Part shown: positions 26,849 to 31,017 of the stretch, one piece after another
Position numbering within the stretch: the first letter of the stretch is position 1
How the letters are laid out: the number at the start of each line of letters is the position of its first letter
Virus record (IMG/VR): IMGVR_UViG_3300027541_000009
Span: 124,001-188,000 of that record
Direction: 5' to 3' (one strand)
DNA: 64,000 nt
Program-made: the position numbers and the translations under genes
Notes under the pieces: model-generated
Told to the model about the DNA's origin: nothing
What the model saw: only the letters and a program-made list of their open reading frames with translations
Databases searched by the model: none

Positions 26849-26882
26849 TTGACACAGGCGGCAAACCGTAGTATGATAAATA
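26849..26882 (+). promoter_or_regulatory. psbA promoter: TTGACA-17-TATGAT overlapping late TAAATA
   Basis: TTGACA 26849-26854, TATGAT 26872-26877, TAAATA 26877-26882. Confidence 0.8.
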
Positions 26883-26934
26883 GGTAAACAAATGTTACGG
26901 AACGCAACGTTCCCTTAACATTGTTAGACACCCG

Positions 26935-27032
26935 ATAACCGAGACCTATGGGTGTATAAATTACGTCTCTCATATCCCCGCTAAGGGTGCGGGGAGCATA
27001 GTATCTCCACCATTTCCCTGATGGTCTTACTA
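26935..27032 (+). ncRNA. PhotoRC-II-like structured psbA leader RNA
   Basis: GAGAC/GTCTC pairing, CCCCGC-TAAGGGT-GCGGGG hairpin and CCAT/ATGG hairpin directly 5' of a phage psbA; similarity to the motif is recalled, not searched. Confidence 0.6.
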
Positions 27033-27045
27033 ACTGCTTAAAACA

Positions 27046-28125
27046 ATGACTGCTACAATTTCACGTCAACGACAATCGAATACTTGGGAACAATTCTGCA
27101 ACTGGGTCACATCAACCGATAATCGTCTTTATGTCGGTTGGTTCGGAGTCCTCATGATTCCTTGCCTGCTTGCTGCTACGACTTGTTTCATCATCGCATT
27201 CATCGGTGCTCCCCCAGTGGACATTGATGGTATCCGTGAACCCGTTGCTGGTTCACTCATGTACGGAAACAACATCATCTCTGGTGCTGTTATTCCTTCG
27301 TCCAACGCGATTGGACTGCACTTTTATCCCATCTGGGAAGCTGCTTCGCTTGATGAGTGGCTTTACAACGGTGGTCCTTTCCAACTTGTAGTGTTCCACT
27401 TCCTTATCGGTATCTACGCTTACATGGGTCGTGAATGGGAACTTTCATACCGTCTTGGTATGCGTCCTTGGATCTGTGTTGCTTACTCTGCACCTGTGGC
27501 TGCTGCTTCTGCTGTGTTCCTGGTGTATCCTTTCGGTCAAGGTTCTTTCTCTGATGCGATGCCTCTGGGTATCTCTGGTACGTTCAACTATATGCTTGTG
27601 TTCCAGGCAGAGCACAACATCCTGATGCACCCCTTCCACATGCTTGGTGTGGCTGGTGTCTTTGGAGGTTCTCTGTTCAGTGCTATGCACGGTTCTCTGG
27701 TTACTTCCTCACTGGTTCGTGAAACCACTGAGAACGAGTCACAGAACTATGGTTACAAGTTTGGTCAAGAAGAAGAGACCTATAACATCGTTGCTGCTCA
27801 CGGTTATTTCGGACGCCTTATTTTCCAATATGCTTCCTTTAATAACTCACGTTCGCTGCACTTCTTCCTTGCTGCATGGCCTGTAGTTGGTATCTGGTTC
27901 ACTGCTCTTGGTGTTAGCACCATGGCATTCAACCTCAACGGTTTCAACTTTAACCAGTCCATCATTGATTCACAGGGTCGTGTCCTCAACACTTGGGCAG
28001 ATGTTCTGAACCGTGCTGGACTCGGGCTCGAGGTGATGCACGAAAGGAATGCACACAATTTCCCTCTGGATCTTGCTGCTGCTAGCAACACTCCTGTTGC
28101 CCTTACTGCACCCGCAATCGGTTGA
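27046..28125 (+). CDS. psbA: Photosystem II D1 protein, intronless
   Basis: Unmistakable D1 sequence, with E130, H332, E333, H337 and A344. Confidence 0.99.
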
Positions 28126-28151
28126 GTTTTATAAAAACTGAATAAGAATGA

Positions 28152-28177
28152 AGAGACCTTTACAGGTCTCTTTTTTT
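28152..28177 (+). terminator. Intrinsic terminator after psbA
   Basis: AGAGACCT-TTAC-AGGTCTCT plus T run. Confidence 0.85.
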
Positions 28178-28222
28178 ATGGTATTATTCATAAATAGTTC
28201 CATACCAAACTTCCATACCATA

Positions 28223-28585
28223 ATGAAAACTTGTAGTAGATGTGGAGAAACAAAAGAACTTGATAGTTTCTCTAAAAGAAGTAGTAGACCTTCTGGGGTT
28301 CAATCAAAGTGTAAGGATTGTGAACGGGAAGTTCGTAGGCAATATTATAAGACTCACGAATATGCTAGACGCAGATTTAAACTTACAGAAGACCAATATA
28401 ATGACCTAATGAAGAATGAGAACTGCCAAATATGTGATGTGGAACTAACCAAGAAGTGTATAGACCACTGCCACTCTACAAATAAGGTTCGTGGTGTTCT
28501 CTGTAACAACTGCAACACTGCATTAGGTCTTGTAGGAGACAACATCAGCACTCTTCAAAAGATGATAGAATACCTAAATAACTAA
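28223..28585 (+). CDS. Endonuclease VII-family free-standing homing endonuclease (F-CphI-like)
   Basis: CSRC...CKDC zinc finger; CQIC...IDHCHSTNKVRGVLCNNCNTALG His-Me motif; late promoter TAAATA at 28191-28196; position directly after psbA. Confidence 0.8.
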   Translation: MKTCSRCGETKELDSFSKRSSRPSGVQSKCKDCEREVRRQYYKTHEYARRRFKLTEDQYNDLMKNENCQICDVELTKKCIDHCHSTNKVRGVLCNNCNTALGLVGDNISTLQKMIEYLNN

Positions 28586-28600
28586 AAAGTATTCATAAAA

Positions 28601-29335
28601 ATGGACGCACAAGAACTTCGCAATCTTCAAGAAGCATATATGGAAGTTGTTGAAAATCAGCAACTGGATGAAATCTCTGATAGAAAAGTCAAAGGAATGT
28701 TAAGAAAGAGAGATGCACAAGATGTAGATAGTGGTGGTATAAGTGGTGCTTGGATGGCAAGACGCCGCGCTCATCAGGCAGCAGCAAGAAGAAATGTAAG
28801 AACAGGTTCAAATGTTCGTGTCGATTCTGATTTAGCAAAAGAAGAAGTAGATGTTTACGATCTAATTCTTTCACACTTACTTGATGAAGGATATGCTGAT
28901 ACTCAACAAGCAGCAGAAGCAATTATGGTGAATATGAGTGAAGAGTGGAGAGACAATATTATAGAAAGAGAGGATAGTCCTTATGAGAAAGCATCTGATG
29001 CTGCATTAGATAAAAGATATGGATATGGTAGAGCATCTGGTGATAAGCGTTCTTTCGGTAGAGCAGCAAATCGTTCATCTGCTGCCGCTGCCCTTCGTGC
29101 TATTAGAAGAGGTGAAAGAAGTGGTAGTGGAACTTCAAGAGAAGCAGGTGCTGATGCAGTTCATCAGGGTTGGGCAAGAACTGCTAAAACAAGTACAGAC
29201 CAAACACCAGAAAAGAAACAAAGAAGAGCAAAACTTGCTAATACATCATATTCAAATCTTCCCGATGATGAAAAGGAAAAGGATAGAGTATCTTTTGATG
29301 CTGTAAGAGCAACTTATAATAGAAACAAAAGATAA
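28601..29335 (+). CDS. Hypothetical late protein with T4-like cyanophage repeat motifs
   Basis: MDAQELRNLQEAY and DLILSHLLDEGYADT..AAEAIMVNMSEEW segments; late promoter at 28575-28580. Confidence 0.7.
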   Translation: MDAQELRNLQEAYMEVVENQQLDEISDRKVKGMLRKRDAQDVDSGGISGAWMARRRAHQAAARRNVRTGSNVRVDSDLAKEEVDVYDLILSHLLDEGYADTQQAAEAIMVNMSEEWRDNIIEREDSPYEKASDAALDKRYGYGRASGDKRSFGRAANRSSAAAALRAIRRGERSGSGTSREAGADAVHQGWARTAKTSTDQTPEKKQRRAKLANTSYSNLPDDEKEKDRVSFDAVRATYNRNKR

Positions 29336-29367
29336 TAAAAAAGGAGGGATAAAACCCTCCTTTAACT

Positions 29368-29571
29368 TTATTTGGAACTTACAAAATCATTAATGATTTC
29401 TGCTTGTTCTAGAACTTGATTAAGTGTTGGAAACTCTGGATAATCCATTGCTACTTTTTTGTTCTCATCTTCATTCCAACGAACAGCAGTATCATATTCC
29501 ATGCTAAACTGGTCATTAAGCATATTATATGCTTGCTTAAAGATTTCAAATCGAAGTTCATAAGGTGTCAT
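29368..29571 (-). CDS. Hypothetical 67-aa protein with its own sigma70-like promoter
   Basis: MTPYELRFEIFKQA...; AGGAG RBS; minus-strand TTGACT (29641-29636) and TATAGT (29619-29614). Confidence 0.65.
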   Translation of the reverse strand: MTPYELRFEIFKQAYNMLNDQFSMEYDTAVRWNEDENKKVAMDYPEFPTLNQVLEQAEIINDFVSSK

Positions 29572-29671
29572 AGATATTCTCCTAATGTGTGTGATGTGTG
29601 TTTCCACTAAGAAACTATATCATAAATTATCAAAAAGTCAAGTAATAATAAAAACCTATCCTCAGTTTTCT

Positions 29672-29713
29672 GAAGCAACTCCTGTTGCTCTCACTGCACC
29701 TTCAATTGGTTGA
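29672..29713 (+). pseudogene. psbA: Stranded duplicate of the psbA 3' end ([13 protein letters not shown])
   Basis: Matches the D1 C-terminal extension ([11 protein letters not shown]) of the intact gene; followed by a shared AACTGAATAA and its own terminator. Confidence 0.85.
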
Positions 29714-29738
29714 TAACAACTGAATAACTGATATAATT

Positions 29739-29764
29739 AGAGGGTGTAACAACCCTCTTTTTTT
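29739..29764 (+). terminator. Intrinsic terminator after the psbA remnant
   Basis: AGAGGGT-GTAACA-ACCCTCT plus T run. Confidence 0.8.
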
Positions 29765-29887
29765 ATGTCTCATAATAATCAACATCATCCTATGGAACCC
29801 TGGATCATCTGGGCAGGTGTAGGTATGATGGTATTTACAGTTCTTGTATTTGTCTTATTCACTCTCGGTCAGATGTATTGGGGATAA
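29765..29887 (+). CDS. 40-aa membrane peptide (not in ORF track)
   Basis: MSHNNQHHPMEPWIIWAGVGMMVFTVLVFVLFTLGQMYWG. Confidence 0.5.
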   Translation: MSHNNQHHPMEPWIIWAGVGMMVFTVLVFVLFTLGQMYWG

Positions 29888-29955: not shown

Positions 29956-31017
29956 ATGACTTCTTCTACACTTTCACAACCTATTCAACAACGAGGATGG
30001 TTTGATGTACTCGATGACTGGCTTAAAAGAGACCGTTTCGTTTTTGTTGGCTGGTCTGGACTTCTTCTTTTTCCCACTGCTTATCTTGCTCTTGGTGGTT
30101 GGATTACTGGGACAACTTTCGTCACGAGTTGGTATACTCACGGGCTTGCGAGTTCCTATCTTGAGGGTGCAAACTTTCTTACTGCAGCAGTTAGTACTCC
30201 AGCAGATTCTATGGGTCATTCTCTTCTTCTGCTCTGGGGTCCTGAGGCTCAAGGGGATATCGTCAGGTGGTTCCAACTTGGGGGACTATGGACTTTTGTG
30301 GCGCTCCACGGGGCCTTTAGTCTGATCGGATTTATGCTTCGCCAGTTTGAGATCTCACGACTGGTAGGCATCCGTCCTTACAACGCAATTGCATTCTCTG
30401 GTCCCATCGCAGTGTTTGTGAGCGTCTTCCTGATGTACCCTCTGGGTCAATCCAGTTGGTTCTTTGCACCTTCCTTTGGTGTTGCTGCTATCTTCAGGTT
30501 CCTTCTGTTCCTTCAGGGTTTTCACAACTGGACTCTTAACCCATTTCATATGATGGGTGTTGCTGGTATACTGGGTGGAGCACTGCTCTGTGCTATTCAC
30601 GGAGCAACTGTAGAAAACACACTATTTGAAGATAGTGATCAAGCAAATACATTCAAGGCATTCGAACCAACACAAGAGGAAGAAACCTATTCAATGGTTA
30701 CTGCTAACCGTTTCTGGTCGCAAATCTTTGGAATTGCTTTTAGTAACAAGCGTTGGTTACATTTCTTTATGCTCTTTGTTCCCGTCATGGGTCTCTGGAC
30801 ATCTTCTATCGGGATTATCGGTCTTGCTCTCAATCTTCGTGCTTACGACTTTGTTAGTCAGGAGATTGAAGCAGCCGTCAATCCGGAATACGAAACTTTC
30901 TACACGAAGAATATACTTCTTAACGAAGGGCTTCGTGCTTGGATGGCTCCCGTAGACCAACCACATGAAAATTTTGTTTTTCCAGAGGAAGTTTTGCCTC
31001 GGGGCAACGCACTTTGA
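29956..31017 (+). CDS. psbD: Photosystem II D2 protein
   Basis: Unmistakable D2 sequence ending EVLPRGNAL; AGGAGG RBS. Confidence 0.99.

What the first reader, a model, noticed from the sequence alone, without database searches (positions are those of the whole stretch)
28018..28585. Locally recoded psbA patch at codons ~325-338 beside an F-CphI-like endonuclease, with no intron
Seen: the rest of psbA uses CGT/AAC/GGT-type codons, but 28018-28060 switches to gga ctc ggg ctc gag gtg atg cac gaa agg aat gca cac aat and encodes L at position 328. The ORF is uninterrupted. Established: D1 normally has M328 (LGMEVMHERN). In phage S-PM2 a group I intron sits near codons 334/335 and the downstream EndoVII-type F-CphI cuts intronless psbA there. 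Inference: here immunity is achieved by synonymous and non-synonymous recoding instead of an intron (intronless homing).
Basis: partly seen in the sequence, partly recalled or inferred. Interest (0 to 1): 0.62.

Follow-up and report, generated by a model that had tools for sequence, protein, structure and literature searches.

The report
Homing endonuclease beside a recoded psbA target
A cyanophage photosystem gene (psbA) carries a short stretch of unusual codons and a Met-to-Leu change exactly where a neighbouring selfish DNA-cutting enzyme family is known to cut, which looks like self-protection without the intron that the textbook example uses.

Summary
psbA (27046-28125) is uninterrupted, with no group I intron. 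Codons 325-338 (28018-28059) form its most codon-atypical 14-codon window and encode L328. The ORF at 28223-28585 is an intact F-CphI-family (EndoVII/DHHRN) endonuclease under strong purifying selection.

The patch coincides with the published 60-bp F-CphI substrate and differs from it at 14 of 60 positions.

In 30 related viral contigs with such an endonuclease beside an intronless psbA, 19 have L328 (coded CTC or TTA, never CTG or TTG). Six replace M331, and 27 have AGR at Arg334 (29 of the 30 have CGN at Arg323). Other relatives carry group I introns at three sites within 16 nt, in or after codons 331, 334 and 336.

In an unselected sample of 120 viral psbA genes, a modified site is associated with a downstream endonuclease (6/15 against 7/90, p=0.003). 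The association survives a phylogenetic pair test (p about 0.03).

A relic of the original psbA 3' end and terminator (29672-29765) lies behind the cassette.

The best reading is intronless homing with immunity from target-site variation. Cleavage resistance is untested. An endonuclease-free relative shares several of the synonymous codons. This is a new variant of a known kind, of moderate interest.

The parts
27046..28125 (+). psbA (D1), 359 codons, uninterrupted
   Evidence: ORF; Pfam Photo_RC 1.7e-89; no Rfam group I intron in the window.
28018..28059 (+). Codon-atypical patch, codons 325-338. It contains L328 (CTC, 28027-28029) and R334 (AGG, 28045-28047). It is the presumed endonuclease target region in a resistant form.
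   Evidence: Codon counts; lowest-scoring window of the gene. It matches the S-BM4 60-mer F-CphI substrate region with 14 differences over 28017-28076, 12 of them inside the patch (compared by eye). Sites that separate endonuclease-linked alleles cluster from 326-3 to 339-3.
28150..28180 (+). Terminator-like hairpin and T-run after psbA, brought in with the cassette. A promoter-like site at 28159-28187 overlaps it.
   Evidence: Its sequence differs from the native terminator kept downstream.
28223..28585 (+). Free-standing F-CphI-family (EndoVII motif, DHHRN) endonuclease, 120 aa. It has an N-terminal CxxC...CxxC zinc ribbon and a C-terminal beta-beta-alpha-metal nuclease domain.
   Evidence: Pfam PF02945; phrog_2633 7e-37; 36% full-length identity to F-CphI. 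Invariant C7 C30 C33 C68 C71 D81 H82 H84 R90 C94 C97 N98 in 32 homologues. dN/dS 0.03-0.15. AF2 pLDDT 90, with best fold matches Hpy99I and T4 EndoVII.
28601..29335 (+). ORF of 244 aa, function unknown; cargo between the endonuclease and the psbA relic
   Evidence: No Pfam hit; weak phrog_3708. Parts of it recur in other contexts.
29340..29363 (.). Bidirectional terminator-like hairpin between the 244-aa ORF and the 79-aa ORF
29368..29607 (-). ORF of 79 aa, function unknown; cargo
   Evidence: no family match.
29672..29713 (+). Relic of the displaced original psbA 3' end: codons 347-359 ([13 protein letters not shown]) plus the stop codon
   Evidence: It is 78.6% identical to the functional 3' end. 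The relic with its terminator is 88.7% identical to the genuine psbA 3' end and terminator of the endonuclease-free relative L110.
29739..29765 (+). Native psbA terminator, now downstream of the cassette
   Evidence: The same terminator follows the endonuclease gene directly in L028 and L037, and follows the ORF244-like region in L048.
29765..29887 (+). Conserved 40-aa ORF (phrog_7358) that normally lies between psbA and psbD
29956..31017 (+). psbD (D2), the conserved right flank of the insertion site

Best explanation
The locus is a free-standing F-CphI-family homing endonuclease cassette lodged at the 3' end of a cyanophage psbA gene, travelling with a psbA allele whose target region has been altered.

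Inferred mechanism. The enzyme recognises the highly conserved stretch coding [13 protein letters not shown] (D1 residues 326-338) in psbA of phages that lack the cassette, and cuts it. The break is repaired from the cassette-bearing genome during co-infection. That repair copies the altered target, the donor's psbA 3' end and the endonuclease gene into the recipient.

The carrier's own psbA would escape cutting because of M328L (ATG to CTC, two base changes), R334 recoded from CGY to AGG, and further wobble changes. In relatives the same zone is instead broken up by group I introns or changed at M331. Met has only one codon, so a Met codon read by the enzyme can only be changed by replacing the amino acid. 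This would explain why both replaced residues are methionines.

Shown here: the anatomy, the intact and selected nuclease, the coincidence with the published F-CphI substrate, the association with endonuclease presence, and the relic of the original 3' end.

Inferred, not shown: that this enzyme cuts psbA at this place, and that the patch blocks cutting.
For: Patch and substrate. The patch equals the 60-bp S-BM4 substrate of F-CphI (PMC6083498 Table S3) and differs from it at 14 of 60 positions. The S-PM2 intron lies between codons 334 and 335.

The enzyme. It has all DHHRN and zinc residues, dN/dS of 0.03-0.15 at dS 0.55-1.1 and an Hpy99I/EndoVII fold.

Endonuclease-linked alleles. Of 30 other contigs with such an endonuclease beside an intronless psbA:
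- 19 have L328, coded CTC or TTA and never the one-step CTG or TTG.
- 5 have S331 and 1 has V331.
- 27 have AGR at codon 334; codon 323 is CGN in 29 of the 30.
All 7 alleles with the 334/335 intron keep CGT334. Introns occur at three sites within 16 nt.

Unselected sample of 120 viral psbA genes. Modified sites have an endonuclease in 6/15 cases, unmodified in 7/90 (Fisher p=0.003). The combination CGN323+AGR334 is found in 6/10 endonuclease-linked against 13/87 endonuclease-free alleles (p=0.003).

Phylogenetic control. Of 11 independent pairs on a tree of codons 1-300, the substitution goes with the endonuclease in about 6, against it in 0, and does not differ in about 5 (median p 0.03). Endonuclease presence changes at least 13 times on that tree.

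Mosaic pattern. The patch is 93% identical to L014 while both flanks are 75%. It is 64-74% identical to endonuclease-free relatives that are 87-91% identical over codons 1-300.

Cellular comparison. Cellular D1 genes with L328 mostly use CTG and keep CGC or CGG at 334, with no endonuclease nearby.

Mobility. Empty-site relatives exist (L108, L110, L147), and some co-occur in the same riverine metagenomes (joints 28125->29765 and 28179->29765). Relics of the psbA 3' end or its terminator lie downstream of the cassette in the window, L028, L035, L037, L048 and L169.
Against: - No cleavage data exist for this enzyme. It is only 36% identical to F-CphI and its N-terminal half differs, so it could have another target.
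- L108 has no endonuclease, with psbA directly followed by psbD, yet shares GGA325, GGG327, AGG334, GCA336 and AAT338. Much of the synonymous pattern is therefore not exclusive to carriers.
- Seven endonuclease-linked alleles in the unselected sample have an unmodified protein sequence. At least L101, L144 and L169 also keep CGY at codon 334.
- L328 also occurs without an endonuclease (L096, L170, L204).
- The within-gene codon test is only p=0.096 once corrected for choosing the window.
- The 3' half of the patch resembles ordinary low-GC psbA alleles, so it could have been imported by recombination.
- The associations rest on small numbers.
Confidence: 0.6

Rival explanations
1. Hitchhiking without a protective role. 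The patch is a piece of the donor lineage's psbA that was co-converted or inherited together with the cassette. The enzyme's real recognition site is elsewhere (another part of psbA, psbD or the intergenic region), or the enzyme no longer homes.
For: - The relic at 29672-29713 shows that the cassette arrived with its own psbA 3' end, so linked polymorphisms are expected whether or not they protect.
- L108 carries most of the synonymous codons without an endonuclease.
- Some endonuclease-linked alleles look unmodified.
Against: - The sites that separate endonuclease-linked alleles concentrate in about 40 nt centred on the known F-CphI site, rather than spreading evenly over the co-converted 3' end.
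- Different solutions (L328, S/I/V331, three intron sites) hit the same 16-30 nt in lineages with different endonuclease N-terminal types.
- Strong purifying selection on the enzyme argues that it is active.
Confidence: 0.2
2. Ordinary psbA mosaicism. The patch is a short tract exchanged with another, lower-GC psbA lineage, of the kind long described for cyanophage and host psbA. It has no connection to the endonuclease.
For: - The 3' half (GAA AGR AAT GCA CAC AAY) is the usual sequence in low-GC alleles such as L084, L117 and L134.
- psbA segments differ in which relative is their nearest neighbour.
Against: - No endonuclease-free allele matches the whole patch better than 88%, and that best match is the close relative L108 rather than a low-GC allele.
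- L328 coded CTC or TTA is not a feature of low-GC alleles, which have M or F.
- This reading does not explain the association with endonuclease presence.
Confidence: 0.12
3. The rare codons serve expression. They might be a translational pause near the D1 C-terminus for assembly of the Mn-cluster ligands, or a binding site for an antisense or regulatory RNA.
For: - Rare codons cluster beside the ligand residues H332, E333 and H337.
- S-PM2 has an antisense RNA (CfrI) that links the psbA 3' end and F-CphI (annotation; PMC2984593).
Against: - The pattern is lineage-specific and tracks the endonuclease rather than psbA in general.
- It includes an amino-acid change.
- CfrI in S-PM2 covers the last ~75 nt of exon 2 and the start of F-CphI, not codons 325-338.
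- No Rfam family matches the patch.
Confidence: 0.05

Closest known systems
F-CphI of cyanophage S-PM2 with the psbA group I intron ('collaborative homing'; Zeng, Bonocora and Shub 2009; Fang et al. 2018, PMC6083498)
   Same: - Same enzyme family: EndoVII motif at the C-terminus, DHHRN residues, and full-length alignment.
- Same position directly downstream of psbA.
- Same target zone, D1 codons 325-344.
   Different: - No intron here. The carrier's site is changed by substitutions instead (M328L, AGG334, wobble changes).
- Only 36% identity, with a different N-terminal half.
- Cleavage has not been tested.
- A 2012 paper states that all F-CphI-like enzymes known at that time lay beside intron-containing psbA (PMC3428280).
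Intronless homing by free-standing endonucleases of T-even phages (SegF, SegG, MobE; Belle et al. 2002; Wilson and Edgell 2009, PMC2790892)
   Same: - A free-standing endonuclease gene lies between conserved genes.
- The enzyme is expected to cut the neighbouring conserved gene in genomes that lack it.
- The carrier genome is protected by nucleotide polymorphisms at the site (stated for MobE).
- The gene is present in some relatives and absent in others.
   Different: - Different nuclease family: EndoVII/DHHRN rather than GIY-YIG or HNH.
- The target is a photosynthesis gene.
- Protection appears to need amino-acid replacements at Met codons.
- The same site is alternatively protected by introns in sister lineages.
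Hpy99I restriction endonuclease and T4 endonuclease VII (solved structures 3fc3, 1e7l)
   Same: Shared beta-beta-alpha-metal fold, zinc-binding cysteines and D-H-x-H...R...N active site.
   Different: Hpy99I is paired with a methylase. T4 EndoVII is a Holliday-junction resolvase with the motif at its N-terminus. The window's enzyme has neither context.
Mobile endonuclease elements that bring a replacement 3' end of the gene they invade, such as the element in atp6 of Allomyces mitochondria. This is recalled from memory and was not checked here.
   Same: The inserted element supplies a new C-terminal coding end for the host gene and leaves the displaced original end as a relic downstream.
   Different: Different organisms and nuclease family. 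Here the displaced part encodes only the D1 C-terminal extension, which is removed from mature D1 (established knowledge), so the insertion point is probably harmless.

Membership tests
F-CphI / DHHRN (EndoVII-motif) homing endonucleases | EndoVII catalytic motif located in the C-terminal half of the protein | tested here: met
   Pfam PF02945 at residues 49-120, 5.7e-18; phrog_2633 endonuclease VII, 7e-37.
F-CphI / DHHRN (EndoVII-motif) homing endonucleases | Conserved CX2-4C ... D-H-x-H ... R ... CX2C-N residues (F-CphI C84, D101, H102, H104, R110, N118) | tested here: met
   C68, C71, D81, H82, H84, R90, C94, C97 and N98 are invariant in 32 homologues and align with F-CphI. The second Asp of DHDH is Cys here; the paper says that residue is not essential.
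F-CphI / DHHRN (EndoVII-motif) homing endonucleases | Aligns over its whole length with F-CphI (the 'endonuclease clade', not the resolvase clade) | tested here: met
   BLASTP covers residues 2-118 against 10-138, 36% identity, E 1e-22. The protein also aligns over residues 2-119 with Hpy99I. The best fold match is Hpy99I.
F-CphI / DHHRN (EndoVII-motif) homing endonucleases | Site-specific cleavage of psbA alleles that lack the protective feature, with no cleavage of the carrier's own allele | not testable with these tools
   Needs an in vitro cleavage assay. Only indirect support is available: the patch coincides with the F-CphI substrate and a modified site is associated with endonuclease presence.
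Collaborative homing (free-standing endonuclease plus ORF-less group I intron at its target) | A group I intron interrupts the recognition site in the genome that carries the endonuclease | tested here: not met
   There is no Intron_gpI match in the window, while relatives L010, L012, L031-L033, L038, L040 and L047 score 56-95 bits. psbA is one open frame.
Intronless homing (free-standing homing endonuclease gene) | An optional gene between conserved genes, present in some relatives and absent in others with the same flanks | tested here: met
   L108 and L147 have psbA followed directly by psbD. L110 has psbA, the native terminator, then psbD. Endonuclease presence changes at least 13 times on the psbA tree. 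Co-occurring empty-site contigs were seen.
Intronless homing (free-standing homing endonuclease gene) | Sequence differences at the target site in the carrier genome, relative to genomes without the gene | tested here: met
   14/60 differences from the S-BM4 substrate. Sites that separate the two groups cluster from 326-3 to 339-3. Whether these differences block cleavage was not tested.
Intronless homing (free-standing homing endonuclease gene) | Unidirectional gene conversion with co-conversion of flanking markers in mixed infection | not testable with these tools
   Only indirect traces exist: mosaic identity (patch 93%, flanks 75% against L014) and the relic of the original psbA 3' end.

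The most novel reading that the evidence does not exclude
D1 codons 328-337 of cyanophage psbA are a crowded battleground between selfish elements and their target. F-CphI-family endonucleases with at least four interchangeable N-terminal (presumed DNA-reading) modules all sit behind psbA. Their carriers escape by one or more of three group I intron insertion sites within 16 nt, replacement of the single-codon residues M328 and M331 that sit beside the Mn-cluster ligands H332 and E333, or recoding of R334 in a way that also removes the U an intron would need at its 5' splice site. The cassette entered through the dispensable C-terminal extension of D1 and left relics. On this reading, selfish-element conflict, rather than photosynthetic function, shapes part of the protein sequence of phage D1. 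Intron-bearing and intron-free carriers of nearly identical enzymes (93% identity) would then form a natural series for testing how collaborative homing arises.
Probability: 0.4. Interest if true: 0.7.

Novelty: new variant of a known kind. Interest (0 to 1): 0.55.

Why it matters
F-CphI is the textbook case of 'collaborative homing', in which an intron protects the endonuclease's own genome. This locus and its relatives show the same enzyme family at the same target protected in another way. Near-identical enzymes sit beside intron-bearing and intron-free alleles.

That gives a direct way to test three questions. Did intron and endonuclease meet by convergence on one site, or by endonuclease turnover? 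How much of a target must change to escape? Does a selfish element force amino-acid changes next to the water-splitting site of a photosystem protein that phages express during infection?

It also bears on reading psbA diversity in marine and river viromes. Part of that diversity at the 3' end may reflect endonuclease conflict rather than host adaptation.

Tried and rejected
1. Within-gene codon test. After correction for choosing the worst window, p is only 0.096, so I do not rest the case on it.

2. Window-wise divergence between L328 alleles and endonuclease-free alleles. It peaks at the patch, but the result is largely circular because the groups were defined by codon 328. I replaced it with grouping by endonuclease presence.

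3. Key papers. Zeng et al. 2009, Millard et al. 2004 and Bonocora and Shub 2009 are not held. The exact F-CphI cut positions are therefore not cited; only the 60-bp substrate from Fang et al. 2018 is used.

4. The 244-aa and 79-aa ORFs. No informative family was found, and the 244-aa ORF is not related to S-PM2 p181.

5. Reads. Only assembled contigs were available, so there are no allele frequencies. The joints come from contigs about 86% like the window, with 30-33 letters on the shorter side. They show co-occurring relatives with an empty site, not excision in this phage. A third joint (28022->29696, 20 letters on the shorter side) was ignored as too weak.

6. Whether L328 is phage-specific. 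It is not: about ten cyanobacterial genomes have it.

7. Import of the patch from a low-GC lineage. Neither shown nor excluded.

8. No simple one-to-one rule links the endonuclease N-terminal type to the kind of site modification.
Full report
**What is in the window.** psbA runs from 27046 to 28125 as one open frame of 359 codons (Pfam Photo_RC). A PhotoRC-II RNA motif precedes it at 26916-27009, and Rfam finds no group I intron anywhere in the 64 kb. After a terminator-like hairpin (28150-28173 plus a T-run) comes a 120-codon ORF at 28223-28585. Then follow a 244-codon ORF (28601-29335), a two-way terminator, a 79-codon ORF on the other strand (29368-29607), a short psbA-like fragment, a second terminator, a conserved 40-codon ORF and psbD (29956-31017). 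The window is part of a 99-kb viral record. The same sequence is present in many riverine metagenomes.

Codons 325-338 (28018-28059) read GGA CTC GGG CTC GAG GTG ATG CAC GAA AGG AAT GCA CAC AAT.
- Elsewhere in the gene GGG is used 0 of 31 times, AGG 0 of 12, CTC 4 of 30, AAT 3 of 21 and GGA 5 of 31.
- The lowest-scoring 14-codon window of the whole gene starts exactly at codon 325.
- A permutation that allows for having picked the worst window gives p=0.096.
- Codon usage alone is therefore suggestive rather than decisive.

**Why this place matters.** Fang et al. 2018 list the 60-bp duplex from phage S-BM4 psbA that F-CphI binds and cuts (PMC6083498, Table S3). It codes for residues 325-344, which is the patch plus 18 nt. 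The window differs from it at 14 of 60 positions, 12 of them inside the patch. These include two changes in codon 328 (ATG to CTC) and two in codon 334 (CGC to AGG). In S-PM2 the intron lies between codon 334 (CGT) and 335.

**The enzyme.**
- The 120-aa protein matches Pfam Endonuclease_7 in its C-terminal half.
- It aligns over its full length with F-CphI at 36% identity and over residues 2-119 with the restriction enzyme Hpy99I.
- In 32 homologues the N-terminal cysteines C7, C30 and C33 are invariant (C4 nearly so). The zinc cysteines C68, C71, C94 and C97 and the active-site residues D81, H82, H84, R90 and N98 are also invariant. These correspond to the residues shown to be essential in F-CphI and T4 EndoVII.
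- An AlphaFold model (pLDDT 90) is most similar to Hpy99I and T4 EndoVII.
- Against eleven relatives dN/dS is 0.03-0.15 at dS 0.55-1.1. The gene is therefore maintained by selection and is not decaying.

**Relatives found through the endonuclease.** A scan of viral contigs gave 80 loci. In about 45 of them the endonuclease lies directly downstream of psbA. Among 30 such loci with an intronless psbA (other than copies of the window itself), searches show:
- 19 have L328, always coded CTC or TTA (two steps from ATG) and never CTG or TTG.
- 5 have S331 (TCC) and 1 has V331. S-SKS1, counted among the 19 L328 alleles, also has I331.
- 1 has F328 only, and 4 keep the usual protein sequence.
- 27 of 30 have AGA or AGG at codon 334, and Arg323 eleven codons upstream is CGN in 29 of the 30 (AGA in L042).

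The remaining loci have group I introns, confirmed by Rfam at 56-95 bits, at three places:
- after the second base of codon 331;
- between codons 334 and 335;
- between codons 336 and 337.

All three lie within 16 nt. All seven alleles with the 334/335 intron keep CGT at codon 334. This fits the U that group I introns need before the 5' splice site (established knowledge). AGG at 334 removes that U. Some alleles stack several features: L010 has L328 plus an intron, and L012 has an intron plus AGA334.

**An unselected control.** I scanned viral contigs for the invariant N338-A344 coding stretch and took the first 120 hits.
- In 105 hits with enough downstream sequence, a modified site (L328, non-Met 331, or an intron in codons 331-337) has an EndoVII-type gene within 2 kb downstream in 6 of 15 cases. 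An unmodified site has one in 7 of 90 (Fisher p=0.003).
- The combination CGN323+AGR334 is found in 6 of 10 endonuclease-linked against 13 of 87 endonuclease-free intronless alleles (p=0.003).
- On a tree built from codons 1-300 only, 11 independent pairs differ in endonuclease presence. The substitution goes the same way in about 6, the opposite way in 0, and does not differ in about 5 (median p 0.03). Endonuclease presence changes at least 13 times on that tree.
- Site by site, 7 of the 25 nucleotide positions that best separate endonuclease-linked from comparable endonuclease-free alleles lie in codons 325-338, where about 1 is expected (p=2e-5). The best single site is 339-3.
- The differentiated span, 326-3 to 339-3, is about 40 nt, a plausible size for a homing endonuclease site.

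**Mosaic structure.** Against L014 (endonuclease 93% identical) psbA is 92.8% identical in codons 1-300, 75% in 301-324, 92.9% in the patch and 74.6% in 339-359. Against the endonuclease-free relatives L147 and L110 the gene is 91% and 87% identical over codons 1-300, but the patch is only 74% and 64% identical. The patch therefore behaves as a unit that goes with the endonuclease.

**Cautions.**
- L108 has psbA followed directly by psbD with no endonuclease. It still shares GGA325, GGG327, AGG334, GCA336 and AAT338 with the window while keeping ATG328. It may have lost the cassette, or received the patch by repair without the gene, or the synonymous pattern may simply be ancestral in this lineage.
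- L328 occurs without an endonuclease in L096, L170 and L204.
- About ten cyanobacterial genomes have L328, mostly as CTG with CGC or CGG at codon 334. The amino-acid change is therefore tolerated by D1 and is not unique to carriers.

**How the cassette got there.**
- At 29672-29713 there is a psbA fragment coding [13 protein letters not shown] plus a stop, followed by a terminator at 29739-29765.
- This fragment and terminator are 88.7% identical to the genuine psbA 3' end and terminator of the endonuclease-free relative L110. They are only 78.6% identical to the window's own functional 3' end.
- The original 3' end was therefore displaced by an incoming block. That block carried its own psbA 3' end and terminator, the endonuclease and, in this lineage, two further ORFs.
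- Similar relics occur elsewhere. In L035 the endonuclease ORF reads into a decayed psbA tail, and in L169 it ends in [12 protein letters not shown]. In L028 and L037 the native terminator follows the endonuclease gene directly, with the last psbA codons still recognisable in L037. In L048 it follows the ORF244-like region.
- The right-hand junctions fall at or after codon 343. That is within or after the part of D1 removed after Ala344 during maturation (established knowledge), which may be why insertion there is harmless (inference).

**Shuffled enzymes.** The N-terminal 52 residues and the C-terminal 68 residues have uncoupled similarity. L028, L030, L032 and L033 are about 50% identical to the window in the N-terminal part but 90-93% in the C-terminal part. 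L048 is 89% identical in DNA from 28461 into the next ORF, although its N-terminus is of another type. At least four N-terminal types occur behind psbA. No simple rule links the type to the kind of site modification.

**Co-occurrence.** In four riverine metagenomes the main contigs equal the window. Minor contigs about 86% like the window join 28125 or 28179 directly to 29765. Relatives with an empty site are therefore present in the same water. These are assemblies, not reads, and they say nothing about frequencies.

**Interpretation.** The best reading is classical intronless homing by an F-CphI-family enzyme, with the carrier's site protected by substitutions instead of an intron (confidence 0.6).
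- The principle is known from T-even phages. For MobE, polymorphisms in the carrier are thought to prevent nicking (PMC2790892).
- For cyanophage psbA, a 2012 paper states that all F-CphI-like enzymes known then lie beside intron-containing psbA (PMC3428280). I found no description of the substituted alleles, the three intron sites or the relic in the papers I could search. I could not read Zeng et al. 2009, which may mention environmental homologues.
- The rival readings are hitchhiking without protection (0.2), unrelated psbA mosaicism (0.12) and an expression-related role for the rare codons (0.05).

**Verdict.** This is a new variant of a known kind, of moderate interest (0.55). The decisive experiment is a simple cleavage assay on the own, reverted and naive sites.

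Noticed in passing
window 29672-29765: A relic of a displaced psbA 3' end ([13 protein letters not shown] plus stop) with its native terminator lies 1.5 kb downstream of the functional psbA stop. It marks the right edge of the inserted cassette.
   Followed up: yes
L032:1-2900 and L038:280-2900: Some related phage psbA genes are packed with group I introns. Rfam finds six matches in L032 and four in L038, including two introns only about 16 nt of exon apart around codons 331-337.
   Followed up: partly
L035:3001-3405 and L169 (endonuclease ORF about 91 nt after the psbA stop): Endonuclease ORFs run into, and end in, remnants of the psbA C-terminal extension (..DATPVALPAPTK and ..[12 protein letters not shown]). 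This suggests insertion inside the extension-coding part of psbA.
   Followed up: partly
window 28223-28585 compared with L028, L033, L047, L048: The endonuclease genes are modular. N-terminal zinc-ribbon halves of at least four types are combined with near-identical C-terminal nuclease halves and downstream DNA, which points to recombination inside the gene.
   Followed up: partly
window 26916-27009: A PhotoRC-II RNA motif (Rfam RF01717, 84 bits) lies just upstream of psbA. A strong promoter-like site lies at 26849-26877.
   Followed up: no
window 28510-28740 and 28852-28965: Two segments of the 244-aa ORF have 2-5 times the contig depth of their surroundings in all four metagenomes, and they recur in other loci (L044, L047, L048, L050). 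They look like conserved modules shared by several phages or several places.
   Followed up: no
L046:2971-3779, L035:3001-4441, L001:4323-5202: Several relatives carry two endonuclease genes behind psbA. L046 has two EndoVII-type genes in tandem, L035 has two about 670 nt apart, and S-SKS1 has an EndoVII-type gene followed by an HNH gene. These are small endonuclease islands.
   Followed up: no
L108:3595-5979 and L147:2397-4687: In these relatives psbA is followed almost directly by psbD, without the terminator, the 40-aa ORF or any endonuclease. In L147 the terminator sits after psbD instead.
   Followed up: partly
L042 and L127: In two loci the endonuclease gene lies on the opposite strand to psbA, yet psbA still has L328.
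   Followed up: no
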